A stretch of 64,000 nt of DNA from Heterodontus francisci (Eukaryota): the NCBI RefSeq assembly GCF_036365525.1, contig NC_090374.1, positions 14,673,168 through 14,737,167 of the forward strand, read 5' to 3'. Shown here in pieces: positions 27,236 through 54,177 of this stretch; position 1 is the first letter of the stretch, and every line of letters begins with the position of its first letter. Both the position numbers and the translations under genes were made by a program. The notes under the pieces were generated by a model. That model saw nothing but the letters and a program-made list of their open reading frames with translations. It did not search any database and was not told the origin of the DNA.

Positions 27236-27239
27236 TTTG

Positions 27240-31200: not shown

Positions 31201-33032
31201 ATCCTGGAATGGGAAGACCCTTCCGATCTTAGATTAGAGATACAGCACTGAAACAGGCCCTTCGGCCCACCGAGTCTGTGCCGAACATCAACCACCCATT
31301 TATACTAATCCTCCACTAATCCCATATTCCTACCAAACATCCCCACCTGTCCCTATATTTCCCTACCACCTACCTATACTAGTGACAATTTATAATGGCC
31401 AATTTACCTATCAACCTGCAAGTCTTTTGGCTTGTGGGAGGAAACCGGAGCACCCGGAGAAAACCCACGCAGACACAGGGAGAACTTGCAAACTCCACAC
31501 AGGCAGTACCCGGAATCGAACCCAGGTCCCTGGAGCTGTGAGGCTGCGGTGCTAACCACTGCGCCACTGTGCCGCAGTCTTGATCAGGTGTATCTATGCT
31601 GCGCTCGATCTGCAGGGTTGCTGAAGACGTCGTGCAGCTTGGCATCTTTAACTGTTTCCGTTAGGAATCTGGACGTAGTGTCCAGTTTGCTGTCATCCCT
31701 GCCGGATCGTCCAGCTGCGTTAATGATGCAGTTGAAGTCACCGCCTAGAATGACCGGTCTGGATGTTGCCAGCAGCAGTGGGAGTTGCTGGAGGACCGTC
31801 AATTGCTCGCTGCATTGAGCTGGGGCATACACGTTGATCAACCGGAGCGGAGCATTGTTGTCCATTACATCTGCTACGAGGATGCGGCCGCACACCACCT
31901 CCTTAACTTCGGAGATGGTGAAGTTACCTCCCCGCAGCAGAATACCCAGGCCGGAGTAACGCGAATCATTACCCCCTTGATCAGATCGATGGCCCGTGGG
32001 ACCACCATCTCAACCATTGCCTGTAGGTGCTGAGGTGTGGTATTCCACACTCCTGCAGAAACAGCAGGTCAGCTTTGACCTTGGTGAGGCAGTCCAAGGT
32101 TAAAACACATCGCGTAGTGGATTTGATGCTACGCACATTAATCGAAGCAATCTTTATACCCATTTTAAAGTTGCTTCCCACACCAGTTGTTCTTGCGAGT
32201 CCCATTCCTTGGGTATGTTCCTGCATACCCATAGTATACACAAGCTGTTTCACATTCGTTGGGCTCAGAAACCCCTCCTGGTTACTCCTGGGGGGTTTGT
32301 TCTGCTGGGGTGACATCAGGGTGGGGTGGGGGGGGTGGTTCTTGTAGGCAGCAAAGCTTGGGCTGTCCTCTGCTGGTGGTGTCTTTCCCCTCTGTTCCTC
32401 CTCAAAGACATCACTGCTCCCGGCTTCCCGGAGCTGGAGTGCGCCAGACGTGTCTTTGCTCTCGGTGTCCCGGAGCTGGGATGCGCTGGGCATGTCGCTA
32501 GGTTCGGCGCTTTGGGTTTGGGGCGTGCTGGGCCCATCACAGCTTCCAGTGCCCCAGAGCTGGGGGGGCTTTATCTTCCAGCTCCTTTGAGTTCTGCCGT
32601 TTCTTTTGCAGGTGCCGTCGTTCTGGCCCTTCCCCGTCAATGAGGAGGAGCTGCCATAGTCTGTCTCAGACGGTAGCCTCCTCTTGCTACTGGTTTGGGT
32701 GGTGACCGGTTCCTTTTTTTGAGGTTTTTTTCTTTGTGGTTTTCTTTTGTACCACTTGCCACTGACCAGTTTGTCCATCTGCTGCCTCATCCTCCACTGA
32801 TTCTGTCTGCAGAGGAGGGGTTTCCAGCACACGGTAGGTGTTGGGTCGCTGGTTGCAGCTGCCTCCCCTGTCTTCTGCTTCTCAGGTAGACTTTCCTCAT
32901 TGCGGGGAGTATTGCTTATCTCCTTCCCAGCACCAGAAGTATTCACCGTTCCTTCTCCCAGCCTTTCCTTGGACCTTGCCCCCTGAGCATAACTGAGGCA
33001 GTGTTTGGGGCAGGTTTTGTAGAGGTGGCCTG
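28262..33032 (-). mobile_element. Tx1/L1-clade LINE, 5'-truncated in ORF1, decayed ORF2
   Basis: Zinc-knuckle end GHLYKTC; endonuclease MGIKIASINVRS..LQEC, GGDFN, SDHC; RT PISLLNVDYKILSK, DQEKAFD, GVRQGCPLSP, YMDD; C-terminal CPLGGCGGEETVAHLFLEC; AATAAA + A-rich end at ~28265-28295. Confidence 0.93.
31231..31577 (-). mobile_element. HE1-like V-SINE inserted in the Tx1 endonuclease
   Basis: tRNA head GGCACAGTGGCGCAGTGGTTAGCAC, V domain GTGTGGAGTTTGCA...GGTTTCCTCCCACA, CR1-type tail; TCTT duplication. Confidence 0.92.
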
Positions 33033-33439
33033 ACAATAAAATCCCAACTATCAATTTAACTAAAGGAAACCTAATAAATTAAATCATCATCTTCTATTCT
33101 GTGTCTACAGTACATTTTTTACTCTTCCTTTGGCCACTCAGAATAACAGCATCAAACAAAATAAAATTAATCTAACAAAAATGGATTAATCTTTTTAAAG
33201 GGACACAAACAATAGCCACCAAATTATTAATAAAACAAAGGGAACTTGTCAAGTGAAATCCGAATATTATTACCCATCTCTCTGTCTCTGTAGTAGGTAT
33301 CATTCAAATACAATGTAAATTCTAGTCTAGAGAGAGATTCTAACACCCTCTAGTGACATGTTTTGGTCATTAACGGGATTGCAAAACTTTTTCAATGCTC
33401 TTGATAGCCATCATTTCATCTGAAGTGCAGCCAATACCC

Positions 33440-36400: not shown

Positions 36401-37115
36401 GCCTGTCCACCAACTATAAGGCGCAAGTCAGGAATGCAATGAAATACTCTCCACTTGCCTGGATGGGTGCAGCTCTAAAAACACTCAAGAAGCTCGACAC
36501 CATCCAGGACAAAACAGCCCACATGATCGGCGCTCCATTCACAACCTTCAACATTCACTCTTTCCATCACTGACCCACAGTGTTAGCTGCGTGTACCACT
36601 TACAAGATGCACTGGAGCAACTCGCCAGGCCCCTTAGACAGCACCTTCCAAACCTATGGACCCTACCACCTAGAAGGACAAGGGCAGCAGATGCATGGGA
36701 ACACCACCTGCATGTTCCCTTCCAAGCCTCACATCATCTTGACTTGGAACTATATCACCATTCCTTCACTGTTGCTGGGACAAAATCCTGGAACTCCCTT
36801 CCTAATAGCACTGTTGCTGTATGTAGACCACATGGAGTGCAGCGGTTCAAGAAGGCAGCTCACTACCACCTTCTCAAAGGTAACTAGGGATAGGCAATAA
36901 ATGCTGGCCTGGCCAGTGACGCCCACATCCCACAAATGAATAAAAGAGAACCTTCTCTGTTGCTTCATCAAAATATTCAATTAGCACGATCTGCCTTTCA
37001 CAAATCTGTGCTGGCTCTCCTTAATTAGCTGAAAGTTCTCCAAGTGCCTGTTCATTTTTTTCACTGATTATTGTTTCTACAACTTTACCCACCACTGATG
37101 TTAAACCAACTTGCC
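33440..37115 (-). mobile_element. Degenerate CR1 (33440-34620, 36946-37115) split by a family B LINE
   Basis: ORFs 33586..33906 and 34152..34568; RT continues after 36946. Confidence 0.8.
34623..36945 (+). mobile_element. Family B LINE retaining both ends (tRNA/SINE-like 5' head, APE, RT, tail), with internal deletions
   Basis: GGGGAGGCAGTAGCGTAGTGG...GGTTTAAATCCCACC head, then SINE body, NIWGLVPKLGEL, YRPISLL, tail CCCACAAATGAATAAAA. Confidence 0.88.
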
Positions 37116-37688
37116 TGTGTTTTATTTTATTTCCGAGTGTTGAGGTGAGTGGTTGGTGCTTTCCAGGAAGCATTAGGAAAAGACTGAGATTGGAAAGTGA
37201 ACAGGAATCTGACTGTCAATAACCCAGCACTGCAATCAAATTCAACTCAATCAGTTTTGCATCATAATATGCCCTGAGGGCTTAACCTTGCAGATTAAAC
37301 TAGACAATAGTGAATAGAGGTGGTCTGGGAGATTTAATCAGGTCCCTGATAGCTCAGCAAATTCTTGCTGTGAGGAGCTGAATCATACAGACCAGAAAGG
37401 GGCCAGTTTCCATCCCCAGTCTGGGCTGAATTAGCCAATCCCAGCTGGGCTGCAGTCGGGGCTCTCCAATTGGTCCAAGAGCTACTGGGATAGGGAAAGG
37501 AAACATTGCCCAGAGTTCCTGATCCTGCTGGGATCCAGCGACCTCTGCTGGACATGTACTGTGTCGCCATTTGTCGACCAGAATGGCTCAAGTGTTTGAA
37601 TCACCTGCCAACACACACTGACCAAAGCTCACTCATGAATCAAGCTTCAGGCATTTAAAGACAAGAGTCTCCCAGCAATATTACATAC

Positions 37689-37788
37689 CTGGATTTGTCC
37701 CTCCATAAAATAATCCACATCACTAAAAGGGCGAGGAGTTTCACTCCAAGTGGAATGCACAATATCGCAATGGGGAAAGTCTCTGCAG
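37689..37788 (-). CDS. SIGLEC15-like: Transmembrane exon of the Siglec-15-like receptor: (A)AETFPIAILCIPLGVKLLALLVMWIILWRDKS
   Basis: 100-nt exon, acceptor ttttctctcccttcctgttcag, donor AG|gtatgt; phase 1 matches the V2 donor; hydrophobic helix with central Lys (LGVKLL, compare Siglec-15 LGFKAL). Confidence 0.88.
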
Positions 37789-37892
37789 CTGAACAGGAAG
37801 GGAGAGAAAACAAATCAGAGACAAGCAAAGGTGAGAGACCAACAACGCAGAGACAATTAATCCAAGTTTGTAAACAAGCAGGGCAGAAATAT

Positions 37893-38877
37893 TGTTGTCT
37901 TTCTTCTTTTGGGCCTCCTTATCTCGAGAGACAATGGATACGCGCCTGGAGGTGGTCAGTGGTTTGTGAAGCAGCGCCTGGAGTGGCTATAAAGGCCAAT
38001 TCTGGAGTGACAGGCTCTTCCACAGGTGCTGCAGAGAAATTTGTTTGTTGGGGCTGTTGCACAGTTGGCTCTCCCCTTGCGCCTCTGTCTTTTTTCCTGC
38101 CAACTACTAAGTCTCTTCGACTCGCCACAATTTAGCCCTGTCTTTATGGCTGCCCGCCAGCTCTGGCGAATGCTGGCAACTGACTCCCACGACTTGTGAT
38201 CAATGTCACACGATTTCATGTCGCGTTTGCAGACGTCTTTATAACGGAGACATGGACGGCCGGTGGGTCTGATACCAGTGGCGAGCTCGCTGTACAATGT
38301 GTCTTTGGGGATCCTGCCATCTTCCATGCGGCTCACATGGCCAAGCCATCTCAAGCGCCGCTGACTCAGTAGTGTGTATAAGCTGGGGGTGTTGGCCGCT
38401 TCAAGGACTTCTGTGTTGGAGATATAGTCCTGCCACCTGATGCCAAGTATTCTCCGAAGGCAGCGAAGATGGAATGAATTGAGACGTCGCTCTTGGCTGG
38501 CATACGTTGTCCAGGCCTCGCTGCCGTAGAGCAAGGTACTGAGGACACAGGCCTGATACACTCGGACTTTTGTGTTCCGTGTCAGTGCGCCATTTTCCCA
38601 CACTCTCTTGGCCAGTCTGAACATAGCAGTGGAAGCCTTACCCATGCGCTTGTTGATTTCTGCATCTAGAGACAGGTTACTGGTGATAGTTGAGCCTAGG
38701 TAGGTGAACTCTTGAACCACTTCCAGAGCATGGTCGCCAATATTGATGGATGGAGCATTTCTGACATCCTGCCCCATGATGTTCGTTTTCTTGAGGCTGA
38801 TGGTTAGGCCAAATTCATTGCAGGCAGACGCAAACCTGTCGATGAGACTCTGCAGGCATTCTTCAGTGTGAGATGGT
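37893..38877 (-). mobile_element. 5'-truncated young RTE-clade LINE with uninterrupted C-terminal ORF
   Basis: 273-aa ORF 37956..38777: FTYLGS, LLYGSEAW, RLRWLGHV, GRPCLRYKD, CSTCGRACHSRIGLYSH. Confidence 0.93.
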
Positions 38878-39065
38878 GCTGAATCAGACCAAGTGTATGG
38901 ACTGTGAATGGAGAGGATGAATAATAGTGTCGAACAGCGACAAGGCTTAATACTGTAGTATTTACAGCATCTAGGTTAGTCCTGTCATATTTACAGTGAA
39001 AAGGGTTAATACTGTAGTATATCCCCATCATGACTAAATATTGCAATGGTCAAAGTGACATGGGT

Positions 39066-40095
39066 ACACAAGAACACAAGAAATAGGAGCATAAGTAGAC
39101 CATATGGCCCATCGAGCCCGCTCCACCATTCGATACGATCATGGCTGATCTTGGGCTTCAATTCCACTTTCCTGACCACTCCCCATATCCCTTGATTCCC
39201 TGTGAGACCAAAAATCTATCTATCCCAGTCTTAAATGTTTTCGACGCTGGAACATCCACAACCCTCTGGGATAGAGAATTCCAAAGATTCACAACCCTTT
39301 GAGTGAAGTAATTTCTCCTCATCTCAGTCCTGAATGTTCGTCCCCATATCATGAGACTGTGTCCCCGTGTTCTAGATTCCTCAGCCAGCAGAAAACATCT
39401 CTTAGCTTCTACCCTATCAAGCCCTTTCAGAATCTTTTATGTCTCAATTAGATCGCCTCTTGGAACTAAACTCCGGAGAATATAGGCTCAATTTGCTCAG
39501 CCTCTCATCATAGGACAACGCTCCTCATCCCAGAGACCAATTTAGTAAATCTTCACTGCACTGCCTCCAGTGCAAGTATATCCTTTCTTAAATGTGAAGA
39601 CCAAAGCTGCACACAGTATTACAGGTGCGGTCTCACCAGAGCCCTGTACAATTTTAGTAAGATTTCTTTATTCCTGTACTCCAATCCCCTTGCAAGAAAG
39701 GCCAACATTCCATTTGCCTTCCTAATAGCCTGCTGCACCTGCATGTTAACTTGTGCATTCTTTGTACGAGTACCCCCAAGTCCCCTCTGAACATCAACAC
39801 TTAGCAGTTTCACATCTTTTAAAAAATATTTTGCTTTTCTATTTTTACAACCAAAGTGAATAACTTCACATTTCCCTGCATTATTCTCCATTTGCCATCT
39901 TGTTGCCCACTCACTTAACCTATATCTCTTTGCAGCCTCTATGTCCTCCCTGCATCTTACCTTTCCACCGAGCTTTGTATCATAAGAAAACTTAGATACA
40001 TTACTCTCTGTCCCTTCATCCAAGTCATTAATATAGAGTGTAAATAGCTGAGGCCCCAGCACTGATCTTCCAACATGAAAATGCCCCATTTATGC
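39066..40095 (-). mobile_element. Degenerate CR1 3' fragment
   Basis: ORFs 39619..40089 and 39158..39352; CR1 3' end near 39070. Confidence 0.85.
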
Positions 40096-40354
40096 TCAAA
40101 TTCTGTAGTACTTACAGTAAAATGGGTGAGTTGTGTAATATTGAGTGTTAGGGGTAAATCATGTCATAGACTCACAGAGTCATTATGGCACAGAGGGAGG
40201 CCAGTCAGCCCTTGGAGTCCATGTAGTACACATGCTGACAGGGGTGAATGCTACATTAATGTTAGGGGGTAAATACTATTGTAATCACAATGCTCGGGGT
40301 AAATCTATAGCACCCATGGTAGCCAGGGTAAATACCTCAATGTCTGCACAGACA

Positions 40355-42020
40355 TGATGATGGGGCTAAAAGAGTTAATTTATGAGGAAAGGTTACATCG
40401 ACTAAGCTTATATACTCTTGCATATTGAAGATGAAGGGGTGATCTGGTTGAGGTGTTTAAGATAATTAAAAGCAGTTGATAGGGTAAATAGAGAGAAACT
40501 ATTTCCTCTGGTGGGAGAGTCCAGAACAAGGGGCCATAACCTTCAAATAAGAGCTAGGCTGTTTGGGGTGATGTCAGGAAGGACTTCTTCACACAAAGGA
40601 TAATGGCATCTGAACCTCTTCCTGGAAAAGCTGTTGAGGCTGGGAATCAATTGAAAACTTCAACACTGAGATTGATAGATTTTTGTTACACAAGGATAAG
40701 AAGGATTATTGGTAAATGGAGTTAAGATGCAGGACAGTCATGTTCTAATTGAATGGCAGGACTTTTTAAAAAAGTAAAGTAACTGTTGTAATGCAGCATA
40801 CATGGAAGCCAAATTGCACACAGCATGATCCCATATACAGCCATTCAAGAATGACCAGATAGTGTGTGTTAGTGGCGTTGGTTCAGAGATAAATATTGGC
40901 CAGGACACTGGGGACAACTCCCATACTCTTCTTCAAAATAGTGTCAGGGGATCATTGACATCCATCTGAGTGGGCAGATGGGACCCCGTTTCATATCTCT
41001 TCTGAAAGATACCACATCCTAAATTGCAGCACTCCCTCAGTTTTCACTGGAGAGTCAGTTTAGATGTTGTGCTCCAGTCTCTGGAGTGGGACCTGAACCT
41101 TTAACCGTCTGATTCAGAAGCAAAAGTGAAATCCACTGAGCTGCTTCTGTTGTACTGCCCACTCTTGCTGTACAACTTCTATACACAGGAGAATATTTTT
41201 TATTCATTCATGGGATGTGGGTGTCACTAGCTAGTCGAGCATTTATTGCACATCCCTAATTACCCTTGAGAAGGTGGTGGTGAGCTGCCTTCTTGAACTG
41301 CTGCAGCCCATGTGGGGTAGGTACACCCACAGTGCTGTTAGGAAAGGAGTTCCAGGATTTTGACCCAGCGACAGTGAAGGAACGGTGATATAGTTCCAAG
41401 TCAGGATAGTGTATGACTTGGAGGGGAACTTGCAGGTGGTGGTGTTCCCATGCATTTGCTGCCCTTGTCCTTCTAGCTGGTAGAGGTTACAGGTTTGGAA
41501 GGTGCTGTCGAAGGTGAGTTGCTGCAGTGCATCTTGTAGATGGTACACACTGCTGCCACTGTGCGTCGATGGTGAAGGGAGTGAATGTTGAAGGTGGTGG
41601 ATGGGGTGCCAATCAAGGAGGCCACATAATCCTGGTTCCAGAAACAAGGCCTTTAAATGGAGTTAAGATGCAGGTCTGCCAGGAGTTAATTGAATGACAG
41701 AACTTTGTTTTTGAAGTGTAGTCACTGTTTTAATGCAGGATACACAGCAGCCAATTTGCACACATTAAGATCCCATAAACAGCAATGAGATAATTATCAG
41801 ACTATGTTTCGGTGTTGTTGGTTCTGAGGTAAATATTGGCCAGGAAATTGGGGGCAACTCCCATACTCTTCCTGAGAGGGCAGTGAGGACCTCGTTTTAA
41901 TATCTCTTCTTAAACACAGCACCTGGAACAGTGCAGCACTCCCTCAGTATTGCATTGAGGTGTCTTGAACCCACAACCTTCTGACTTAGAGGTGAGAGTG
42001 CTAACCACTGAGCCACAGCT
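40355..42020. mobile_element. Mixed old repeats: CR1 3' end (+, 40355-40760), Deu-SINEs (-, ~40770-41140 and ~41700-42020), family B tail (-, 41197-41620)
   Basis: Family-diagnostic motifs shared with other copies in the window. Confidence 0.7.
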
Positions 42021-42098
42021 GATGAGTGTTGTCTGTTACACCACCCACCCTCACTGTGCAACATCTATACACTGGAGAATGTGGGAATGGTTTCTTAC

Positions 42099-42449
42099 CA
42101 TGTACAACCTGCAGCTGTGTCTCAGTCTGGATCAGATGTTGATAATTGTCCAATGATGTGTATTCCACCAGACACAGGTAAGTGTGATTGTCATTCACAC
42201 TCAGCTGGTTTATCCTGGTTGAGGCGTTTCCCTCCTGTGGATTCCCGATGAGTTCGTACCGATTTCCACCATTTGCAGTTGTCCAAGATCCATTTGATTG
42301 GGCTCTGAATGTGACTATGTGTTGGTAGGGCTCCTTCCTCATCCATGTAACAGTGGACAGGGTGCGGTAACTCCTGGGTGTGAACATACAGGGCAATGTA
42401 ACTGAAGCTCCCTCGGTCCCAGTCACCACTGAGACATTTCCATGGGCAG
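42099..42449 (-). CDS. SIGLEC15-like: Second Ig V-set exon of the Siglec-15-like receptor
   Basis: 351-nt phase 1-1 exon (tgtcctttcctcag| ... CAT G|gtaag); EGASVTLPC..VTW..RYELIGNPQEGNAS..DNHTYLCLVEY..TQLQV. Confidence 0.93.
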
Positions 42450-43269
42450 CTGAGGAAAGGACAGACATCAGAATGGATCAGTGTCTTGATGAGAACTTTA
42501 ACTTATTTCAGTTCTGAGCTCTCCCTGTGGTCCAGTAGGTAGAGGCATTGCCCAGTGTAGTACTCAGCCAGTGGAGATCCCAGGGATTGTGGGCTCAGGA
42601 GGCCGGGTAGCAGAACAGATTGAAAGATGGTGACAAAACAGGAAACAGAGGGTAAGAGGTCAGGGACGTTTCTCAGACTAGCAGAAAGTGGGAAGTGGTT
42701 TGACTTGTACTGAATGGTTTTATTAATACAACCCAATGCCCTGTTTGTTTTGTCAATGGCTTCACTGCATTGGTTGTGAATTTTGAGTGATGTGTGTACA
42801 TTAACAGTCTCGATCCTTTTCTCTCTCAGCCACTTTCTGTATTATTCCCTGTAAATGTTCAGTGAATTCCGTGTTGATCCTACCTACCCGCATCACACTG
42901 CATTTGTCTCGGTTAAATATCATTTCCCATTGGTCCCAGAAATGCCCAGACGATTCAATCGATTTGAGGGGCAACATCGGGGGAAGGTTAAGGTGCGGCT
43001 AATGGCACCTCAGCCAGTGCAGCACTCCCTCGGTACTGCCCTGAAGTGTGAGCTGAGCAGCAATGACCCAATTGACAGCGTCTCCCTGTGATCCACCCGC
43101 CAATTCTCCACTGAAATCATTTCAATGTATGAAGCGGTGGAACAGGTCCAGTCAGCTTTGGGCTGGACACTGCAGGCCTACAGCACTGAGACTGTGAGAT
43201 GGACGTAGCTGGTTCTAATAACATGGGAACATATATATCACATTGAAAGATGATTGAGCTTCAATAGGA

Positions 43270-43900
43270 CAGTTTAGGAATCTGAGAACAAAGAGGTCAG
43301 AATGAGAGTGGGATAGAGAAGTAACATGGCAGGAGATGGGAAGCTCTGGGTTACTCTTGTGCATTGAATTGAGGTTTCCAAAAATCAACAGTGTTTGGTT
43401 TCCCCATTGTGGAGGAGACCACATTGTGAGCAGTGAATACGGTATATTAAGTTGGAAGAAGTACAAGTAAATTGATGATTCACTTGAAAGGAACATTTGG
43501 GGTCCTGGACAGTGGGAAGGGAGGAGGTGACATGGCAAGTTTTGCACGGAAAAAGGATGTTGGGGTGATGAAGAGTGTTTCATCATGTAGCAGACAGAAT
43601 GGTCACTTTGGAATGCCAGAATGGGAGGAGAAGATGTGTTTGACAATGGAGGTGGTGGAAATGGCAGAGGGTGAACCGTTGAATGTGAAGGCTGCTGCAG
43701 TGGGACAAAGGGGGAGCCCAGTCATGGGATGGGAAGCGGTGAGGACGTAAGTGTGGGAAATCGGATGAACACAGTTGATACCCCTGCCAACTACTGTGTT
43801 TAAGTTAAAGGAATACAAATCAGAAGCACTGGTGTGGTAGGCGATATCTTCAGAACAGATGTGATGGATACAGTGAAATTGGGAGACAATTGCAGATCTG
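43270..43900 (-). mobile_element. Old Penelope-like remnant
   Basis: Colinear homology to the GIY-YIG region at 46850-47240. Confidence 0.7.
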
Positions 43901-44385
43901 TGCACCCAACCAAGTGATCTGTTGGGAAGATCTTCAAAAGCTGGAGGAAAGGATTCAAAGGATAAAGTGTCTGGACTAACGTTCATGGTCACATGATACA
44001 AAAATGATGAAGTTGATTATTCATAGTTTTCATTCTCAATTAATCAGTCAATTTGTTAATTAATCAACAGACCCAGACATGAAGTGAGGAAAATCCCCAG
44101 TGGTGGAGAGTACTGGGAACTATAGACCCAAAGTCACCTGTTTCTTCCAAGCCACCCTGCACTCACTGCAGGAGTTTCCACTTTGGCACAATGGACAAGC
44201 TGGGTGCAAATTACGCTCAAAATTACATGAGTTTCAGCATTGATATTTTTGCTCAATTTTCTGCTCACACTCAGATACATATCACCAAACATAAAATATA
44301 CCATAAAGCAGAGCAAACAGGCAGCGTTTGAATTTTAGTTTTTTATAAAAAAAGTTTTGCATTAAAATTATTCCTTGATATATTT

Positions 44386-47300
44386 AACATAGAAACATAG
44401 AAAAATAGGAGGAGTAGGCCATTCGGCCCTTCGACCCTACTCCGCCATTCAATACGATCATGGCTGATCATCCAAACTCAGTACCCTATTCCCACTTTTT
44501 CCCCGTATCCCTTGCTCCCTTTACACCTAAGAACTATATCTAACTCTTTCTTGAATATATTTAGTGATTTGGCCTCTACTGCTTTCTGTAGTAGAGGATT
44601 CCACAGGTTCACCACTCTCTGGGTGAAGAAATCCCTCCTCATCTCAGTCCTAAATGACTTACCCCTTATCCTTAGACTGTGACCCCTGGTCCTGGACTCC
44701 CCCGCCATCGGGAACATCCTTCCTGCATCTAGTCTGTCCAGTCCTGTTAGAATTTTGTAGGTTTCTATGAGATCCCTTCTCATTCTTCTAAACTCTAGCG
44801 AATACAAGCCTAATCGACCCAATCTCTCTTCAGACGTCTGTTCTGCCATCCCAGGAATCAGCCTGGTGAACCTTCACTGCACTCCCTCCATAGCAAGAAC
44901 ATCCTTCCTCAGATAAGGAGACCAAAACTGCACACAATACTCAAGGTGTGGTATCATCAAAGTGGATAACCTCATATTTATCCACATTATACTGCATCTG
45001 TCATGTATTTGCCCACTCATTCAACCTGTCAAAATCACACTGGAGCTTCTCTGCATCCTCCTCACAGCTCACTCTCCCCCACAGCTTTGTGTCATCTGCA
45101 AACTTGGATATATTACATTTAATTCCCTCATCTATATCATTAATATATATTGTGAATAGCTGGGGTCCTCACACTGGTCCCTGTGGTACCCCACTAGTCA
45201 CTGCCTGTCACTCGGAAAAAGACCCGTTTATTCCTACTTTTTGTTTCCTTTCTGCCAGCCAGTTCTCTATCCATGTCAGTACCTTAACTCCAATCCCATG
45301 CGCTTTAATTTTGCATGCTAATCTCTTATGTGGGACCTTATTGAAAGCCTTCTGAAAGTCCAAATACACCACACCCACTGGTTTTCCCTTATCTATTCTA
45401 CTGGTTACATCCTCAAAAAATTCCAGTAGATTTGTTGAGCATGATTTCCCTTTCGTAAATCCATGCTGACTTTGTCCGATCCTGTCACTGTTTTCCAAGT
45501 GCTCGATTATTACATCTTTTATAATGGACTATAGCATTTTTCCCATGACTGATGTCAGGCTAACTGGTCTATAATTCCCTGTTTTCTCTCTACCTCCTTT
45601 TTTAAACAGTGGGGTTACATTAGCTACCCTCCAATCCATTGGAACTGTTCCAGAGTCTATAGAATTTTGAAAAATGATCAGCAATGCATCTACTATTTCA
45701 AGGGCCACTTCCTCAAGTACTCTGGGATGTAGATTATCAGGCCCTGGGGATTTATCAGCCTTCAATCCTGTCAATTTCCCTCACACCATTTCCCTACTAA
45801 TATTGATTTCATACAGTTCCTCCTTCTCACTAGACCCTATGTTCCCTAACATTTCTGGGAGGTAATTTGTGTCCTCCTTTGTGAAGACAGAACCAAAGTA
45901 TGTATTTAATTGGTCTGCCATTTCTTTGTTCCCCATTATAAAATTCCCCCGTTTCTGACTGCAAGGAACCAACATTTGTCTTCACTAATCTTTTTCTCTT
46001 CACATATCTATAGAAGCTTTTACAGTCAGTTTTTACGTTCTCAGCAAGCTTACTCTCATACTCTATTTTCCTTTTCTTAATCAATCCCTTTGTCCTCCTT
46101 TGCTGAATTCTAAACTGCTCCCAATCCTCAGGTTTGCTGCTTGTTCTGGCCATTTTATATTTCTCCTCCTTGGATCTAATACTATCCCTAATTTCTTTTG
46201 TAAGCCACAGTTGAGTCACCCTTCCTGTTTTATTTTTGCGCCAGACAGGAATGAACAATTAAAACAAGAAATGCTGGAAATACTCAGGTCTGGCAGCAGG
46301 TCTGGAAAGAGAAGCAGAGTTAATGTTTCAGGTCAGTGACCCTTCTTCAGAATTGGCAGATATTAGAAATGTGAAAGGTTTTAAGCAAGTAAAGCGGGGT
46401 GGGGCAAGAGATAACAAAGGAGAAGGTGTAGATAGGACAAGGTCACCGAGAATAACCGACCAGAAGGTCATGGAGCAAAGGCAAACAATTTGTTAATGGT
46501 GTGTTGAAAGACAAAGCATTAGTACAGATAGGGTGTTAATGGACTGAAAACTGAACAGCCACAAGCACAACATGAAAAAAAACAGTGGGTAAGCAAACTG
46601 AACAAACTAAGATAAAATAAAATAAACACAAAAAAAGATTTAAAAAAAGAAGAAAAAATAACTAAAAATGAAAGTAAAATGGGGGGCCCGTCATGCTCTG
46701 AAATTATTGAACCGAAGGTTCAGTCCGGCAGGCTGCAGTGTGCCTAATTGGTAAATGAGGTGCTGTTCCTCGAGCTTGGGTTGCGGTTCACTGGAACATT
46801 GCAGCAATCCCAGGACAGAGATGAGAGCAGGGGGGAGTGTTGAAATGGCAAGCAACTGGAAGCTCGGGGTCATGCTTTTGGACTGAGCGGAGGTGTTCCG
46901 CAAAGCGGTCACCCAGTCTGCGTTTGGTCTCCCCAATGTAGAGGAGACCACATTGTGAGCAGCGAATACAGTATACTACATTGAAAGAAGTACAAGTAAA
47001 TCGCTGCTTCACCTGAAAGGAGTGTTTGGGGCCTGGGATAGTGAGGAGAGAGGAGGTAAATGGGCAGGTATTACACCTCCTGTGATTGCAGGGGAAGGTG
47101 CCGTGGGAAGGGGACGAGGTGGTGGGGGTAATGGAGGAGTGGACCAGGGTGTCGCGGAGGGAACGATCCCTTTAGAATGCTGACAGGGGAAGGGAGGGGA
47201 AGATGCGTTTGGTAGTGACATCACGTTAGACGTGGTGGAAATGGCAGAGGAATTAACAATTGTTGTACTTCATCCATGCACTCTTTAAATGCTAACCATT

Positions 47301-47550
47301 GCCTATTGACTGTCAACCCTTTAAGTAACGTTCCCCAATCTATCATAGCCAAATTACACCTCATACCTTCATAGTTTCCTTTATTTAGATTCAAGACCCT
47401 AGTCTTGGAATCAACTCTCTCACTGTCCATCTTAATGAGGAATTCTATCATGTTATGGCTGCTCTTCCCCAAGGGACCCCGCACAACAAGATTATTAACT
47501 AATCCTTTCTCATTACACAATATCCAGTCTGGGATGGCCTGTTCTCTAGT
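44386..47550 (-). mobile_element. Degenerate CR1 ORF2 interrupted by Penelope
   Basis: ORFs 44478..44849, 45208..45498, 45529..45774, 45830..46258, 47221..47520. Confidence 0.88.
46261..47250 (-). mobile_element. 5'-truncated Penelope-like element (GIY-YIG endonuclease)
   Basis: FTCTSFNVVYCIRCSQCGLLYIGETKRRLGDRFAEHL; duplication AACAATT at 46254-46260 / 47255-47261. Confidence 0.92.
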
Positions 47551-48166
47551 TGTGATAACTTGGTGCAGTTTTATTAATATGGCTGAAAATCAGTTTTATC
47601 CGAATAAAATTGCATTGGAGCGCTAAAGTGGGAGTTTTATGACTGAGGGTAATAAGTGTTAGTTTTATCTAAAGTCTAGTCTTTCTTTTATTTAGCAAAT
47701 TAACTTAACAGTTGCTGTTTGGGTTGGAGAAGGTGAGTTTTAGACCAGCTTTAAACAGAGTTCACTCAGGCTCTGCTTGCAGCCGCACCTTGTTAATTAG
47801 ATAACAGGCTTAAACCAGTTTTCAGGGGCGAGAGTCAGTCAGTATAAAAGTGGGCCATCTTACAGTGCTGACTTTGTTTGCACTAGAGTGCTGACTTGGG
47901 TTGCATTAGAGTGCTAAAGTGGGCGTTTTGTGACTGAGGGAGTTTGGTGAGGAGGGAGCGAGGTGCTCCTATCATTTTCTACCTGTCCTCAAAGAGCGTG
48001 AGGGGAGCCGAGAGTCTCCACAGAGCACAGCTGACAGGTGTGTAATTCCTGCTGGGTACTTTTCAAGCTGGATTGAATTGTAAGTCATTGTTTCAGCAAG
48101 ACTTAGTTGATTGATTTTTAAAAATTATAATAGTCTTCTAAAGTTTTAAATTTAAAGGGTATAGTC

Positions 48167-49108
48167 ATGGCAGGACAGCACAAAGCCGTGGTTTGCTCCT
48201 CTTGCTGCATGTGGGAATCCGGGAACATTTCCAGTCCCCGGGACCAGCATGTGTGCAGGAAGTGTGTCCAGCTGCATCTCCTGGAAGCTCGGGTTTCAGA
48301 GCTAGAATGGCAGCTGGAAACACTGTGGAGTGTCTGCGAGATTGAGAGTATCATGGAAAGCACATGGAAAGAGGTGGTCACACCGCAGCTGAAGGGACTT
48401 GAGGAAGGAAGGGAATGGGTGACCACCAGACAGTCCAAGAGAATCAGGCAGGTAGTTCAGGAGTCCCCTGGGGTCCCACTTGCAAATCGGTATTCCATTT
48501 TGGAGGCTGATGAGGCTGGTTCCTCCAGGGAGTGCAGACAGAGCCAAGCTTCTGGCACCACAAGCAGCCAGTCTGCACAGGAAGGGGGAAAGAGAGGAAG
48601 AGCAATAGTAATAGGGGATTCTACAGTCAGGGGAACAGATAGGTGCTACTGTGGCCGTCAGCGTGACTCCAGGATGGTGTGTTGCTTCCCTGGTTCCAGG
48701 GTCCAGGATGTCATTGAACGGCTACAGGGCATCCTGAAGGGGGAGGGTGGTAAGGCAGAGGTCATGGTACATGTTGGTACCAATGACATAGGAAGAAAGA
48801 GGGATGAGGTCTTGCATCAAGAGTTCAGGGAGTTAGGCAGCAGACTAAAAAGCAGGACCTCTCGGGTTGTAATCTCTGGATTATTCCCAGTGCCACGTGC
48901 TAGCGTCTATAGAAATAGGAGAATAGCACAGATGAATGCGTGGCTTAAGAATTGGTGCAGGAGGGAGGGTTTTAGATTCCTGGACCACTCGGACCGTTTC
49001 TGGGGAAGGTGGGACCTGTACAAGCGGGACGGTCTACATCTGAACCAGAGGGGGACTAACATCCTTGCTGGCGGGTTTGCTAGTGCTGTTTGGAGGAGTT
49101 TAAACTAA
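48167..49108 (+). CDS. CR1 ORF1p: zinc finger/leucine zipper + SGNH esterase-like domain
   Basis: CSSCCMW..CRKC..LEARVSELE; IGDS, HVGTND and DGLHL blocks; 313 aa uninterrupted. Confidence 0.9.
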   Translation: MAGQHKAVVCSSCCMWESGNISSPRDQHVCRKCVQLHLLEARVSELEWQLETLWSVCEIESIMESTWKEVVTPQLKGLEEGREWVTTRQSKRIRQVVQESPGVPLANRYSILEADEAGSSRECRQSQASGTTSSQSAQEGGKRGRAIVIGDSTVRGTDRCYCGRQRDSRMVCCFPGSRVQDVIERLQGILKGEGGKAEVMVHVGTNDIGRKRDEVLHQEFRELGSRLKSRTSRVVISGLFPVPRASVYRNRRIAQMNAWLKNWCRREGFRFLDHSDRFWGRWDLYKRDGLHLNQRGTNILAGGFASAVWRSLN

Positions 49109-50452
49109 TTTGGCAGGGGGAGGGGACGCAGACTCCGAGCAGAATAGGGACACAGCTAAACACAGGAAAGCAAACAAGTCAGAGGAATACAATGGAAGTA
49201 TGTTTCTAGGGAGTAAGACCAGGATGGATGGCCTCTACTTTAATGCCAGGAGTATTACAGGTAAAACGGATGAGTTAAGGGCAAGGATTGACACGTGGAA
49301 TTGTGATATAGTAGCCATCACGGAGACATGGTTGAGGGAGGGGCAGGATTGGCAGCTCAATATCCCAGGATATAGAATCTTCAGGTGGGACAGAGGGGGG
49401 GGGGGGTAAAAGAGGAGGGGGCATTGCAATATTAGTTAAGGAGTCAGTTACTGCAGTAAGGAGAGATGATATCTTGGAGGGGGCATCAAATGAAGCTTTA
49501 TGGGTAGAGTTTAGGAATAAAAAAGGGACAGCCACATTGCTAGGTGTTTATTATAGACCCCCAGATAGTCAGCGGGAAATTGAGGAGCAAATATGTGCGC
49601 AATTTGCAGAGGTGTGTAAAAATAATAACAGGGTAATTATATTAGGTGATTTCAACTTTTCCAACATTAATTGGGATAGTCATCATGTTAAGGGCTTAGA
49701 TGGAGTGGAGTTCTTAAAATGTATACTGGAGAACTTTTCCGCTCAATATGTAGAGGATCCAACAAGGGAGGATGCAGTGCTGGACCTAATTCTGGGGAAT
49801 GAAGCTGGACAGGTGGTTGATGTGTTGGTGGGGGCGCATTTTGGTGATAGCGACCACAACATGGTACAATTTAAGCTTGTTATGGAGAAAGAAATAGACA
49901 AGTTGCAAAAAAAGGTTTTGGATTGGAGGAGAGCGAATTTTAGTAAAATAAGGCAGGATCTGGCCAAGGTAGACTGGAAAGAGTTACTTGTCGAGAAATC
50001 TACAGAAGAGCAGTGGGGGGCATTCAAAAAGGAAATGGGGAGGGTACAGGCCCAACATGTTCCCTCCAGGGTAATAGGTAGGAGCAACAAGCCCAGAGAA
50101 CCATGGATGACCAACAACATTCAGGATACGATGAGAAGGAAAAGAGAGGCTTTTAGAAAATACAAGGACAGCAAATTAACAGAAGCATTAGTGGAATACA
50201 GAAAGTGTAGGATGGAGCTTAAGAAAGCAATTAGGAGAGCAAAGAAGGGATATGAGAAAGCTCTGGCTGGTAAAAGTAGGGAAAATCCCAAGATATTCTG
50301 TAAGTATATCAATGGGAAGAGGATAACCAGGGAAAGAGTGGGACCCATTAGGGACCAAGGGGTAAATCTGTGGGTGGAGCCAGAGGACATTGGTCAGGTG
50401 TTGAACGAATACTTCACATCTGTCTTCACCCAAGAGAAAGAGGATGTAGATT

Positions 50453-50802
50453 AGGGCGGCACAGTGGCGCAGTGGTTAGCACCGCCGCCTCACAGCTCCA
50501 GCGACCCGGGTTCAATTCTGGGCACTGCCTGTGTGGAGTTTGCAAGTTCTCCCTGTGTCTGCGTGGGTTTCCTCCGGGTGCTCCGGTTTCCTCCCACAAG
50601 CCAAAAGACTTGCAGGTTGGTAGGTAAATTGGCCATTATAAATTGCCCCTAGTATAGGTAGGTGGTAGGGAAATGTAGGGACAGGTGGGGATGTGGTAGG
50701 AATATGGGATTAGTGTAGGATTAGTATAAATGGGTGGTTGATGGTCGGCACAGACTCGGTGGGCCGAAGGGCCTGTTTCAGTGCTGTATCTCTAAACTAA
50801 AC
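50453..50802 (+). mobile_element. HE1-like V-SINE inserted in CR1 ORF2
   Basis: Near-identical to 31231-31577; host frame EKEDVD|MELRE rejoins. Confidence 0.92.
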
Positions 50803-52879
50803 ATATGGAACTCAGAGAGAGAGACTGTGAGGTTCTCGAGCAAATTGTCATAGGGAGTGACAAGGTATTGGAGGTTTTGGCAGGCTTAAAAGTGGACAAA
50901 TCTCCAGGTCCGGACGATTTGTGTCCCAGGATGCAGTGGGAGGCGAGGGTGGAGATTGCAGGGGCTCTGACCCTAATTTTTAATTCCTCTCTGGCCACGG
51001 GGGAGGTGCCAGAGGACTGGAGAACAGCTTATGTGGTCCCACTATTTAAGCAAGGTTGTAGAGATAAGCCAGGGAACTACAGACCAGTGAGTCTCACGTC
51101 AGTGGTAGGGAAACTATTGGAGAAAATTCTGAAGGAGCGAATCAATCTCCACTTGGAGAGGCAAAATTAGATTAAGAATAGTCAGCATGGCTTTGTCAGA
51201 GGGAGGTCATGCCTAACAAATTTGATTGAATTTTTTGAGCATGTGACCAGGTGTGTAGATGGATTTCAGCAAAGCCTTTGACAAGGTCCCACATGGGAGA
51301 CTTATCAAGAAAGCAAATGCACATGGGATACAGGGTAACTTGATAAGGTGGATTCAAAATTGGCTTATCTGTAGGAAACAGAGAGTGATGACAGACGGCT
51401 GTTTTAGTGACTGGAAGCCAGTGTCCAGTGGCGTACCACAGGGATCTGTGCTGGGTCCCCTATTGTTTGTCATTTATGTAAATGACATAGATGACTATGT
51501 GGGGGGTAGGATCAGCAAGTTCGCGGACGACACAAAGATTGGCCGAGTGGTTAACAGTGAGGTTGAGTGTCTTGGGTTACAGGAAGATATAGACGGGATG
51601 GTCAAATGGGCAGAAAAGTGGCAGATGGAATTTAACCCTGAAAAGTGTGAGATGATACACTATGGAAGGAGTAATGTGACATGGAAGTATTCAATGAATG
51701 GCCTGACACTGGGAAGTTCCGAGGAACATAGATCTCTGAAGGCAGAAGGGCAGGTTAATAGGGTGGTGAAAAAGGCATATGGGACACTTGCCTTTATCAA
51801 TCAAGGCATAGATTACAAAAGCAGGGAGGTCATGTTGGAGTTGTATAGAACTTTGGTAAGGCCACAGCACTGTGCAATTCTGAGCGCCACATTATAGGAA
51901 GGATGTGATTGCACTGGAGGGGGTGCAGAGGCGATTCACCAGGATGTTGCCTGGGATGGAACATTTAAGCTATGAAGAGAGGTTGGGTAGGCATGGGTTG
52001 ATTTCGCTGGAGCAGAGAAGACTGAGGGGTGACCTGATCGAGATGTACAAGATTATGGGGTGCATGGACAGGGTGGATAGGGAACAGCTGTTCCCCTTAG
52101 TTGAAGGGTCAGTTACGAGGGGACACAAGTTTAAGGTGAGGGGCAGGAGGTTTAAGGGGCATTTGAGGAAGAACTTTTTTACCCAGAGGGTGGTGACGGT
52201 TTGGCATGCCCTGCCTGGGAGGGTGGTAGAGCCGGGTAGCCTCACATCCTTTAAAAAGTACCTGGATGAGCACTTGACACATCATAACATTCAAGGCTAT
52301 GGGCCAAGTGCTGGCAAATGGGATTAGGTAGATAGGTCAGGTGTCTTTAATGCATCGGTACAGACTCGATGGGCCAAAGGGCCTCTTCTGCACTGTATTA
52401 TTCTGTGATTCTGTGAAAATAAGCCTTTTTAATCGGTGTCTAATCCACCACCTGAGTAATCTGATTTTTAAATAACTGAAAATGATTTTAAAAAACTAAA
52501 CAGAACTATCCACTAGTTGCATTGATGTACAGTAGTCAGTTTCTTAGTAAAGTTTTAAATATATATAAAAACTGTTTAAAAATGCTGCTAGATAAACAGC
52601 TTAATTTTAAGAGGCTCTTTGAAGGGTCATAAACAGGCACAATGATCAGAAACTTGGCATGATGGTTAAATCTATCTGGGGAGGTGATCAGTTTTATCAT
52701 CAGGGCCAGATTGCAAAATGACATTTTTAAAGCATCCCAAAAAATCACAACTCAGTTTGCACTGGATGTAATTTGTGCTTGTAATTCTTCAATCTTTTGC
52801 AATGATTTGGCAGATTTTGGGTAAATTTTGCCCAAACTGTCAGACACTCCAGGCTGTAATATCTTAAATTACTGAAATA

Positions 52880-53470
52880 TAGGTCAGAGGCTTGGAATCC
52901 TGCAGCGAATAACTCACCTCCTGACTCCCTAAAGCCTGTCCACCATCTACAAGGCACAAGTCAGGAGTGTGATGGAATACTCTCCACCTGCCTGGATGGG
53001 TGCAGCTCCAACAACACTCAAGACGCTCGACACCATCCAGGACAAAGCAGCTTGATTGGCACCCCATCTACAAACATTCACTCCTTCCACAACCAACGCA
53101 CAGTGGCAGCAGTGTGTACCATCTACAAGATGCACTGCAGCAACGCACCAAGACAGCACCTTCCAAACCTGCGACCTCTACCAACTAGAAGGACAAAGGC
53201 AGCAAGTGCATGAGAACACCACCAGCTGCAAGTTCCCCTCCAAACCACACACCATCCAGACTTGGAACTATATCGCCGTTCCTTCACTGTCGCTGGGCCA
53301 AAATCCTGGAACTCCCTTCCTAACAGCACTGTGGGTGTACCTGCTACCTGTACATGGACTGCAGTGGTTCATGAAGACAGCTCACCACCACCTTCTCAAG
53401 GGCAATTAGGGATGGGCAATAAATGCTGGCCTAGCCAGCGCCACCCACATCCCATGAATGAATTAAAAAA
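52880..53470 (+). mobile_element. Family B LINE 3' fragment
   Basis: YKAQVRSVMEY region and tail CCCATGAATGAATTAAAAAAA. Confidence 0.88.
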
Positions 53471-53793
53471 ATTATTACTGAAAGGAATTGATCTAATTCG
53501 TAGTTGCCTCATTCAAATGGCACCCCCTAGAGCTTGGTCAATGAGTGTCTGTGGACTATTTGACTGTGAGAGCCTCACAGGAAGGTCCAATGTCTCATTC
53601 AATGTCCAATAAGACACCTTCCTGCAGGAGTGTCTGGAAAGTGATCAGGAGCAGGAATCCCGGGCAATATTCCCCTTTCAAAGCCCGGGATTGCTGAGAG
53701 TTTATTTACCCGTGTGGTTCAGGACCAGACCAGGTGGAGCCTTTAGCCATTGAGCTATCGGGGCAGCTGCAGCCCCTGAACATTGTTCCTCAC

Positions 53794-54177
53794 CTTCCAC
53801 TCTCAGACTCGTTAGTTTCAGTGTTTGATGTTTTCCAACAGTGAGCTCCACACGACACCGATAATGACCACTGTCCGCCCGGATCAGCCGCTCCATCATT
53901 ATTGAGACATCTTTGTTACTGAAGTTCCCCACGAATCTGAATCGATTCCCGCCGTCCTGCTGTATCACATTCTCACACAGCTCACTCTGTGAATGGCCTG
54001 GACCAGAATATGTACACTTAAAAATAACATTGTTACGGCCTTTGTACCATATCACAGAGCCGGTGACCGTCTGATCAGTGTGTGGGTGGGTGAAAGTACA
54101 CGACAAGACAGCGGACCCTCCTTCCTCAACACTCACTATATCCGCAGCGCTCATTGTCCAACCATTAGCAGAAACCT
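53794..54177 (-). CDS. SIGLEC15-like: N-terminal Ig V-set exon, Siglec-15-like sialic-acid-binding domain
   Basis: 384-nt phase 1-1 exon (tctctctccacag| ... GAA G|gtgagg). WTMS..EGGSAVLSCTFTHPH, VIFKC...SELC, RFRFVGN..KDVSIMMERLIRADSGHYRCRVEL parallels Siglec-15 (WSMQ..AVLPCTFTHPH, VFRC..SELC, RFRLLGN..NDLSLRVERL..YFCRVEF), including four Cys and the essential Arg. Confidence 0.93.

What the first reader, a model, noticed from the sequence alone, without database searches (positions are those of the whole stretch)
37689..54177. Siglec-15-like receptor with non-canonical V-V-TM(Lys) architecture
Seen: three phase-compatible, stop-free exons. V1 keeps the Siglec-15 signature (CTFTHPH, extra Cys pair FKC...ELC, F-strand YRCRVE with the essential Arg). 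The second domain is another Siglec-type V-set (RYELIGNP..GNAS) with Leu at the Arg position (YLCLVEY) and four N-glycosylation sequons. No C2-set exon is visible in the intervening unique sequence. The TM has a central Lys. Established: canonical Siglec-15 is V-C2-TM(Lys) and pairs with DAP12/DAP10; tandem V domains are exceptional among Siglecs (e.g. Siglec-12). Inference: a chondrichthyan-specific Siglec-15-related activating receptor, probably one of an expanded family, using a non-binding V domain as a stalk.
Basis: partly seen in the sequence, partly recalled or inferred. Interest (0 to 1): 0.78.

Follow-up and report, generated by a model that had tools for sequence, protein, structure and literature searches.

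The report
Shark Siglec-15-like V-V activating receptor
This is a real horn shark gene, already listed in RefSeq, for a surface receptor with two V-type immunoglobulin domains and a lysine in its membrane span; it is one copy of a large shark-and-ray family that grew out of the usually single sialic-acid receptor Siglec-15.

Summary
On the minus strand lie three open, phase-compatible exons with canonical splice sites: V1 (54177-53794), V2 (42449-42099) and a Lys-bearing membrane exon (37788-37689). The leader exon is not in the window.

V1 is closest to human Siglec-15 among solved structures (E 3e-16; next is CD33, 1.6e-5). No C2 remnant is in the window.

The gene belongs to a family found only in sharks and rays in my searches (86 of 86 and 88 of 88 hits). 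The family has activating (Lys) and inhibitory (ITIM) members with about 94-97% identical ectodomains.

V2 is old: cartilaginous fishes, horn shark included, also have V-V-C2-TM(Lys) "Siglec-15" genes.

Expression of this copy was not shown. RNA-like contigs end at its exon borders but carry paralogues' letters.

Ligand and adaptor are inferred. The scan had already found this family at seven or more other places in this genome.

The parts
53794..54177 (-). V1 exon (384 nt, phase 1/1): Siglec-15-type V-set domain with four Cys and the F-strand Arg
   Evidence: Searches give the borders and splice sites. Pfam V-set E 9.5e-14; best solved relative is human Siglec-15 (7zoz_A), E 3.2e-16; identical to residues 22-148 of RefSeq XP_067885299.1 (P0226).
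42099..42449 (-). V2 exon (351 nt, phase 1/1): second V-set domain, Leu at the Arg position, four N-glycosylation sequons
   Evidence: V-set E 2.2e-16; best is Siglec-15 at 1.8e-9, with TIM-2 and pIgR at 2-3e-8; identical to residues 150-265 of P0226.
37689..37788 (-). Transmembrane exon (100 nt, phase 1 in, phase 2 out) with a central Lys (..PLGVK..)
   Evidence: identical in P0226, P0229 and P0232, and absent from isoform X4 (P0236); the PLG-x-K motif is shared with bird, lungfish and ray Siglec-15 membrane spans.
24554..24615 (-). Coding part of the last exon. Acceptor AG at 24617-24616 gives tail RKEQD (stop 24602-24600). An alternative acceptor AG at 24613-24612 gives a 19-residue tail (stop 24556-24554). 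The same exon closes the TM-skipping soluble isoform.
   Evidence: tblastn hit 24613-24557; frames and stops; the tails of P0226, P0229 and P0236 match.
42450..53793 (-). Intron between V1 and V2 (11.3 kb), mostly retroelement debris, including a CR1-like LINE on the + strand at about 48134-52327
   Evidence: ORF1 with a GDSL esterase domain, E 7.8e-15; no credible C2 match.
37789..42098 (-). Intron between V2 and the TM exon (4.3 kb). No Ig-like exon inside.
   Evidence: 0 of 13 minus-strand stop-free stretches of 60 aa or more match an Ig family at E 0.1 or better; no C2 hit here.
24616..37688 (-). Last intron (13.1 kb), filled with LINE/SINE sequence

Best explanation
The window holds exons 2-5 of an intact horn shark (Heterodontus francisci) gene. 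[quoted passage not shown]

The product is a type I membrane protein:
- a leader, whose exon lies upstream of the window;
- a Siglec-15-type V domain (V1);
- a second, glycosylated V domain (V2);
- a membrane span with a central Lys;
- a tail of 5 or 19 residues.

It is an activating member of an elasmobranch multigene family of paired receptors. That family descends from the cartilaginous-fish V-V-C2-TM(Lys) form of Siglec-15 by loss of the C2 exon.

Likely mechanism (inferred):
- V1 binds a ligand, probably sialylated, on its C-C'/F/G face.
- V2, which lacks the Arg, acts as a spacer.
- The membrane Lys recruits a DAP12/DAP10-type ITAM adaptor.
- Inhibitory sister genes with almost the same ectodomain signal through an ITIM.
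- Skipping the TM exon would give a soluble form.
For: Shown:
- Exon borders, phases and splice sites.
- The three exon translations and both tails are contained exactly in XP_067885299.1, XP_067885300.1, XP_067885302.1/303.1 and XP_067885304.1.
- Both domains are V-set.
- V1 is far closer to human Siglec-15 (62.6 bits) than to any other solved protein (CD33, 28 bits).
- In the alignment, V1 keeps the human C64-C142 and C95-C104 cysteines, R143 and W44. Residue names come from PMC10264397 passages.
- No C2 remnant was found.
- Family: 86 of 86 hits and 88 of 88 hits are sharks or rays.
- Horn shark paralogues with the Lys span share 30/32 TM residues.
- Inhibitory paralogues share 120/127 V1 residues (P0235) and 113/116 V2 residues (P0161). 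They carry an uncharged span and a C-terminal V-I-Y-A-x-V motif.
- V-V-C2-TM(Lys) proteins exist in Callorhinchus, rays and sharks, horn shark included (P0282).
- The V2+C2+TM part of P0282 aligns colinearly with bird Siglec-15 (E 6e-27).
- The V2 domains of the two architectures group together (96*; 92/33).
- RNA-like contigs end exactly at 37689/37788 and at 42099, so these borders are used at least in paralogues.

Inferred: the ligand, the spacer role of V2 and the adaptor.
Against: - This copy's own transcript was not seen. At 37726, 42237 and 42253 every contig in all four runs carries the paralogues' letter. Pieces on the TM exon differ at 4 of 100 letters.
- A V2-to-TM joint is not among the 15 joints listed (61 more were not shown).
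- The runs are only guessed to be RNA.
- The leader exon is not in the window. RefSeq XP models are automatic predictions whose support I could not see.
- The free careful tree put the family's V1 clade with lamprey and turtle rows (96/86*), not with Siglec-15. The AU tests only show that this is not decisive.
- Of the human ligand contacts, Y87 falls in a 3-residue gap of this copy's short C-C' loop and Y154 aligns with Leu.
- The Arg is missing in 4 of 14 family V1 rows sampled (one more not parsed).
- I did not check whether horn shark has DAP12.
Confidence: 0.8

Rival explanations
1. The copy is intact-looking but silent or decaying: an unexpressed duplicate in a birth-and-death cluster, whose RefSeq models rest on reads from near-identical paralogues.
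For:: no contig with this copy's own letters at the three diagnostic places; no leader exon within 9.8 kb upstream. The copy has private substitutions at otherwise constant family positions, such as Ser for Pro before the first Cys, and His in the F and G strands.
Against: All four coding exons in the window are open with canonical splice sites. All Cys, the Arg and the Lys are kept. RefSeq gives it protein models, not a pseudogene. Contigs drop rare variants, and only one sample (four runs) was laid.
Confidence: 0.12
2. The gene does not derive from Siglec-15. It belongs to another V-set receptor lineage (CD300/pIgR/TIM-like, or the skate MDIR family) and resembles Siglec-15 only by convergence or shared V-set features.
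For: V2 scores almost as well against TIM-2 and pIgR as against Siglec-15. NCBI names family members variously pIgR-like, JAM-like, Siglec-12 or HAVCR1-like. The free tree did not join V1 to Siglec-15.
Against: V1 shows a 35-bit gap in favour of Siglec-15. It shares the CxFTHPH signature, both disulfides, the Arg and the Trp. The PLG-x-K membrane motif is shared. The V-V-C2 intermediates have C2 and TM parts that align with bird Siglec-15. The tree constrained to V1 + V-V-C2 d1 + Siglec-15 has a higher likelihood than the free tree. None of the 88 hits to a skate member is named MDIR or comes from clearnose skate. That is only a weak negative, because MDIR sequences themselves could not be fetched.
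Confidence: 0.05
3. A C2-set exon exists but was missed (short, diverged, or in a paralogue-specific isoform), so the mature receptor is V-V-C2-TM like the canonical shark form.
For: A weak match of a mammalian Siglec-15 C2 to 43424-43269 (E 0.023).
Against: That match lies upstream of V2 (wrong order), lacks the Cys, and was one of ten queries. 0 of 13 open stretches between V2 and TM are Ig-like. None of the four RefSeq isoforms of this gene has a C2. Nor did any family protein that I read.
Confidence: 0.02

Closest known systems
Canonical Siglec-15 (human, bird, frog, teleost): V-C2-TM(Lys), pairs with DAP12/DAP10
   Same: An N-terminal V domain with the CxFTHPH signature, the B-F disulfide plus the extra C'-C'' disulfide, the F-strand Arg and the N-terminal Trp. 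A membrane Lys in a PLG-x-K context. No ITIM.
   Different: No C2 domain and a second V domain instead. The tail is only 5 or 19 residues. It is multigene, with inhibitory sisters. This copy has a short C-C' loop without the Y87 equivalent, and Leu at the Y154 position.
Cartilaginous-fish V-V-C2-TM(Lys) 'Siglec-15' (horn shark P0282/RefSeq, Callorhinchus P0022, Mobula P0034, Pristis P0224)
   Same: The same V1-V2 order. The V2 domains group together. A Lys span and a very short tail. P0282 and the window gene's own RefSeq products show the same longest-contig length, 212,062,168 bp.
   Different: These proteins keep the C2 domain that aligns with bird Siglec-15. Identity to the window gene is only 47/127 in V1 and 47/116 in V2. 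Horn shark P0282 has Leu where the Arg should be.
Mammalian paired Siglecs (Siglec-5/14, Siglec-11/16)
   Same: Activating (charged span) and inhibitory (ITIM) genes with nearly identical ligand-binding domains. Variable blocks are shared in a mosaic pattern, as expected from gene conversion. For the mammalian pairs I saw only titles and abstracts (PMC4042635, PMC5701461).
   Different: The mammalian pairs are CD33-related Siglecs with C2 domains. This family derives from the Siglec-15 branch and is far larger.
Siglec-12 (two V-set domains) and the two-V Siglec-15 of lungfish and gar
   Same: Tandem V domains in a Siglec.
   Different: In lungfish (P0020) and gar (P0021) the two V domains are recent twins that group with each other. 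Here V1 and V2 are only 28% identical, and V2 forms an old clade specific to cartilaginous fishes. The architecture of Siglec-12 is recalled, not checked.
Skate modular domain immune-type receptors (MDIR)
   Same: A cartilaginous-fish multigene family of activating and inhibitory V-type Ig receptors (PMC3031540 passages).
   Different: MDIRs are described there as CD300/TREM/pIgR-like. No MDIR-named protein appeared among 88 hits to a skate family member. A direct comparison was not possible.

Membership tests
Siglec-15 (canonical, orthologue sense) | N-terminal V-set domain of the Siglec-15 type (signature before strand C, B-F disulfide plus extra C'-C'' disulfide) | tested here: met
   E 3.2e-16 to 7zoz_A, and all four Cys align; the paper's description of C64-C142 and C95-C104. 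Cys at 26, 54, 67 and 107.
Siglec-15 (canonical, orthologue sense) | Essential Arg on strand F (human R143) | tested here: met
   alignment: the Arg of C-R-V-E aligns with the human one. Searches give its role. Binding itself was not tested.
Siglec-15 (canonical, orthologue sense) | A single C2-set domain between V and the membrane | tested here: not met
   RefSeq isoforms; no C2 match; 0 of 13 open stretches are Ig-like.
Siglec-15 (canonical, orthologue sense) | Lys in the membrane span | tested here: met
Siglec-15 (canonical, orthologue sense) | One-to-one orthology and conserved locus | tested here: not met
   Horn shark has a separate V-V-C2-TM(Lys) gene (P0282) that aligns with bird Siglec-15 through C2 and TM, and the window gene has many paralogues.
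Siglec-15 (canonical, orthologue sense) | Sialic-acid binding and DAP12/DAP10 association | not testable with these tools
   Needs protein work.
Elasmobranch V-V-TM Siglec-15-like paired receptors (RefSeq-annotated; no paper found) | Leader - V1 (Siglec-15 type) - V2 (GNxxxGNAS, Leu at the Arg position) - TM, no C2 | tested here: met
   (V2 has Leu in 13 of 14 rows).
Elasmobranch V-V-TM Siglec-15-like paired receptors (RefSeq-annotated; no paper found) | Activating and inhibitory members with near-identical ectodomains | tested here: met
   V1 120/127 to inhibitory P0235 and V2 113/116 to inhibitory P0161; the tails.
Elasmobranch V-V-TM Siglec-15-like paired receptors (RefSeq-annotated; no paper found) | Expression of this member | tested here: inconclusive
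   the contigs respect the exon borders but carry paralogues' letters.

The most novel reading that the evidence does not exclude
In sharks and rays, sialic-acid sensing by Siglec-15 has moved from one conserved gene to a fast-turning multigene system of paired on/off receptors. Loop cassettes of the V1 binding face (C-C' loop, F-strand flank, G strand) are shuffled between activating and inhibitory genes. Meanwhile the ancestral V-V-C2 gene of horn shark has lost the essential Arg. That would be a KIR- or Siglec-5/14-like arms race built on the one Siglec thought to be static across vertebrates.
Probability: 0.3. Interest if true: 0.65.

Novelty: new variant of a known kind. Interest (0 to 1): 0.45.

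Why it matters
The two papers I read passages of treat Siglec-15 as a conserved V-C2 activating receptor (PMC7226832, PMC10264397). That it is a single gene outside cartilaginous fishes is recalled, not checked.

The data here show something different in cartilaginous fishes:
- The ancestral-looking form has two V domains.
- In elasmobranchs it gave rise to a large family without the C2 domain.
- That family has both activating and inhibitory members.

This gives a natural series for three questions:
- What the C2 domain and the second V domain do.
- How the Siglec-15 binding face can vary.
- Whether paired-receptor evolution, known from KIR, Ly49 and CD33-related Siglecs, arose independently on this branch.

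The locus itself is an ordinary member of the family. It is already in RefSeq, so the value lies in the family rather than in this copy.

Tried and rejected
- **Leader exon.** I looked for it in the window with a motif scan and with a BLOSUM scan using eight family leaders on all six frames (best score 37, inside a LINE). It is not there.
- **C2 exon and inhibitory exons.** I ran tblastn with the C2-to-end parts of eight proteins and two inhibitory tails. I also ran Pfam on 13 of 13 open stretches between V2 and TM, and on 1 of 46 between V1 and V2. Nothing credible came up, so a hidden C2 is rejected.
- **Reads.** I hoped to see the V2-to-TM joint. Only 15 of 76 joints are listed, all inside repeats. 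The exon pieces come from paralogues, so expression of this copy stays open.
- **Trees.** About 130 columns are too few. The free careful tree joins V1 to lamprey and turtle rows. I do not trust this, because the constrained alternative is as good or better. I named the constrained groups after seeing the tree.
- **MDIR identity.** I could not fetch the skate MDIR sequences. There is only the negative result.
- **Literature searches.**
  - Siglec-15 + shark: 15 papers held the terms.
  - Siglec-15 + cartilaginous fish: 3 papers.
  - Siglec / elasmobranch / paired receptors: 15 of 203 papers were listed, and none of those holds 'elasmobranch'.
  - Siglec + elephant shark: 5 papers.
  - Siglec + Chondrichthy-: 8 papers.
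  - MDIR: 1 paper.
  - Judged by titles and abstracts, plus passages of PMC8455134 and PMC13262535, none describes this family.
  - I did not ask for supplements. Supplementary file 9 of PMC8455134, which lists Ig families, may bear on this.
  - Subscription journals are not covered.


Full report
**What is there.** The window has no N and is dense with retroelement debris.
- V1: 54177-53794, 384 nt.
- V2: 42449-42099, 351 nt.
- A membrane exon: 37788-37689, 100 nt.

The first two begin and end in phase 1. The third begins in phase 1 and ends in phase 2. Each acceptor is a pyrimidine tract plus AG, and each donor starts with GT. All quoted motifs are present. V1 has four Cys and one sequon. 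V2 has two Cys and four sequons. The span has a central Lys. Pfam calls both domains V-set (E 9.5e-14 and 2.2e-16). Each exon occurs once in the window, and V1 and V2 are 28% identical over 103 residues.

**The rest of the gene.** A tblastn with 11 family proteins found one more piece, at 24613-24557, 13 kb below the membrane exon. Reading it shows:
- An acceptor AG at 24617-24616. After the phase-2 membrane exon this gives the tail R-K-E-Q-D and a stop at 24602-24600.
- A second AG 4 nt further on. This gives a 19-residue tail ending at 24556-24554.
- If the membrane exon is skipped, V2 runs into the same exon in the long frame. That would be a soluble form.

No leader exon is in the 9.8 kb upstream that the window holds. 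That may be the leader, but I could not check it.

**It is an annotated gene.**
- The representative search with V1 gave 215 proteins at E 0.001 or better. The word search with a full-length relative gave 86 at E 1e-10 or better.
- A script showed that the window's three exon translations are exact substrings of these proteins. One junction residue (Ala) sits at each join, and the tails are those read above.
- X1 and X2 differ by the 4-nt acceptor choice. X3 lacks the leader. X4 skips the membrane exon.
The RefSeq proteins served as the joined form, in local scripts only.

**No C2.**
- None of the four isoforms has a third Ig domain.
- tblastn with the C2-to-end parts of eight V-(V-)C2 proteins found nothing better than E 0.023. 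That match is at 43424-43269, upstream of V2, and lacks the Cys.
- Of the 13 minus-strand open stretches of 60 aa or more between V2 and the membrane exon, 0 match an Ig family at E 0.1 or better.
- Of the 46 such stretches between V1 and V2, I scanned only one by Pfam. The rest rest.

**Relation to Siglec-15.**
- Against all solved structures, V1's best match is human Siglec-15 (E 3.2e-16, 62.6 bits). The next is CD33 (1.6e-5, 28 bits).
- In that alignment V1 keeps the cysteines of both human disulfides, the F-strand Arg and the N-terminal Trp. The residue roles are from passages of PMC10264397 and PMC7226832.
- Two other human contacts are not kept. Y87 falls in a three-residue gap of this copy's short C-C' loop, and Y154 aligns with Leu. 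Sugar binding is therefore plausible but not assured.
- V2's best match is also Siglec-15 (1.8e-9), but TIM-2 and pIgR follow closely.
- V2 has Leu at the Arg position in 13 of 14 family rows (one not parsed).

**Where V2 comes from.**
- The hits include proteins with V1-V2-C2-TM. They come from Callorhinchus (P0022, Lys span), Mobula (P0034, Lys), Pristis (P0224) and Heptranchias (P0024, inhibitory tail).
- A search with P0224 found 35 relatives. One is a horn shark protein, P0282 (401 aa, RefSeq 'Siglec-15', Lys span, three-residue tail).
- The V2+C2+TM part of P0282 aligns colinearly with bird Siglec-15 (E 6e-27). Its V1 aligns with the bird V as well (E 5e-17).
- In the domain trees, the family's V2 clade (100/99*) sits next to the V2 domains of the V-V-C2 proteins. 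Support is 96* in the quick tree of 97 rows, but only 92/33 in the careful tree of 74 rows.
- The simplest reading is that the two-V form is old in cartilaginous fishes and that the V-V-TM family arose from it by loss of the C2 exon.
- The membrane exon supports common descent: its ..PLGVK.. resembles bird ..PLGIK.. and the shark and ray V-V-C2 spans.

**Limits of the tree.**
- The family's V1 domains form a firm clade (100/99*). The free careful tree, however, joins it to lamprey and turtle rows (96/86*), not to Siglec-15.
- AU tests show the data do not decide. Holding V1 with the V-V-C2 first domains costs 1.12 log units (p 0.45).
- Holding these together with the Siglec-15 group gives a tree 0.71 log units better than the free search found (p 0.52).
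- I named the groups after seeing the tree, and only about 130 columns are available.
- The case for Siglec-15 descent therefore rests on similarity scores, shared signatures and the V-V-C2 intermediates.

**The family.**
- All 86 hits and all 88 are from sharks or rays. The chimaera appeared only among the V-V-C2 relatives.
- The listed clusters hold 24 different horn shark protein sequences. They are products of fewer genes, and I could not count loci.
- The 13 aligned products differ in V1.
- Members with the Lys span share 30/32 residues of the membrane exon with this gene.
- Members with an uncharged span and a long tail ending in V-I-Y-A-x-V (an ITIM by the pattern quoted in PMC7226832) share 120/127 residues of V1 (P0235) and 113/116 of V2 (P0161).
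- Variation among paralogues is concentrated in three blocks of V1: the C-C' loop (short or long form), the residues flanking the F-strand Cys, and the G strand. V2 has a few smaller blocks.
- The variable blocks occur in different combinations in activating and inhibitory genes.
- These V1 blocks lie on the face that the human structure paper describes as the ligand and antibody site.
- The Arg itself is not universal. It is present in 9 of 14 family V1 rows and in 3 of 9 V-V-C2 first domains, with two not parsed. Horn shark P0282 has Leu.

**Expression.**
- One search for runs with the V1 stretch gave four runs of one sample. They hold 24-28% of its words and are only guessed to be RNA.
- I laid them on 37400-42900 (5,501 letters).
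- Contig pieces lie exactly on the membrane exon (37689-37788/9), inside longer records that do not match the flanking introns. Pieces on V2 start exactly at its donor border (42099).
- The material therefore behaves as spliced RNA, and these exon borders are in use.
- But the membrane-exon pieces differ at 4 of 100 letters. At 37726, 42237 and 42253 all contigs in all four runs carry another letter. Translated, those are the paralogues' Ile in the span and Lys in N-P-K-E-G of V2.
- The contigs thus come from sister genes. This copy's own transcript was not seen. Contigs drop rare variants, so absence is not shown either.
- The V2-to-TM joint is not among the 15 joints printed.

**Mechanism.**
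- Shown: the exon structure, the domain types, the conserved residues, and the paired family.
- Inferred from established knowledge of Siglec-15 and other Lys-span receptors (PMC10264397 and PMC7226832 passages):
  - The Lys recruits a DAP12/DAP10-type adaptor.
  - V1 engages a probably sialylated ligand through the Arg.
  - V2, glycosylated and Arg-less, holds V1 away from the membrane in place of the lost C2.
  - The 5- or 19-residue tails carry no Tyr.
  - The TM-skipping isoform would be secreted.

**Novelty.** The gene and many relatives are in RefSeq under a variety of automatic names. In six literature searches, and in the passages read, I found no description of a two-V Siglec-15 or of this paired family in cartilaginous fishes. 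Subscription journals and supplements were not covered. Earlier agents of this scan reported the same family at seven or more other places in this genome. This window adds one more activating copy.

Noticed in passing
window 48134-52327 (+): A CR1-like LINE sits in the V1-V2 intron. Its first ORF carries a GDSL-type esterase domain (Pfam E 7.8e-15). It is followed by endonuclease/RT-like ORFs that are broken into several frames.
   Followed up: partly
window 57911-61626: A retroelement-like block. An ORF at 57911-58552 (+) has a SCAN (capsid-like) domain (E 4e-11). The next ORF has a Cys-His knuckle-like stretch. Long minus-strand ORFs at 59788-61149 have no Pfam match. Described only.
   Followed up: partly
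window 42483-42900: A 1,976-letter contig of run X1 matches this intron stretch at 415 of 418 letters. It leaves the window's sequence 34 nt upstream of the V2 acceptor. It may be a paralogue's unspliced intron or a transcribed LINE fragment.
   Followed up: no
P0282 (horn shark V-V-C2-TM(Lys) 'Siglec-15', not in the window): The likely true Siglec-15 counterpart of horn shark has Leu at the essential Arg position of V1. So do the Mobula, Hypanus and Leucoraja proteins. Callorhinchus, Pristis and Heptranchias keep Arg.
   Followed up: partly
window 24611-24617 (-): Two acceptor AGs 4 nt apart shift the frame of the last exon. One gene therefore yields a 5-residue or a 19-residue tail. The same long frame closes the TM-skipping soluble isoform.
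   Followed up: yes
window 43269-43424 (-): Weak similarity (E 0.023, 25% over 60 aa) to the C2 domain of a mammalian Siglec-15. It lies upstream of V2 and lacks the Cys, so it is probably chance. Pfam found nothing in the enclosing open stretch.
   Followed up: partly
window 20335-20835: A stretch open in several frames on both strands, with a periodic peptide-like repeat. It looks like a minisatellite.
   Followed up: no
window 4046-6949 (-): A 968-aa uninterrupted CR1-type ORF2, possibly a young LINE copy.
   Followed up: no
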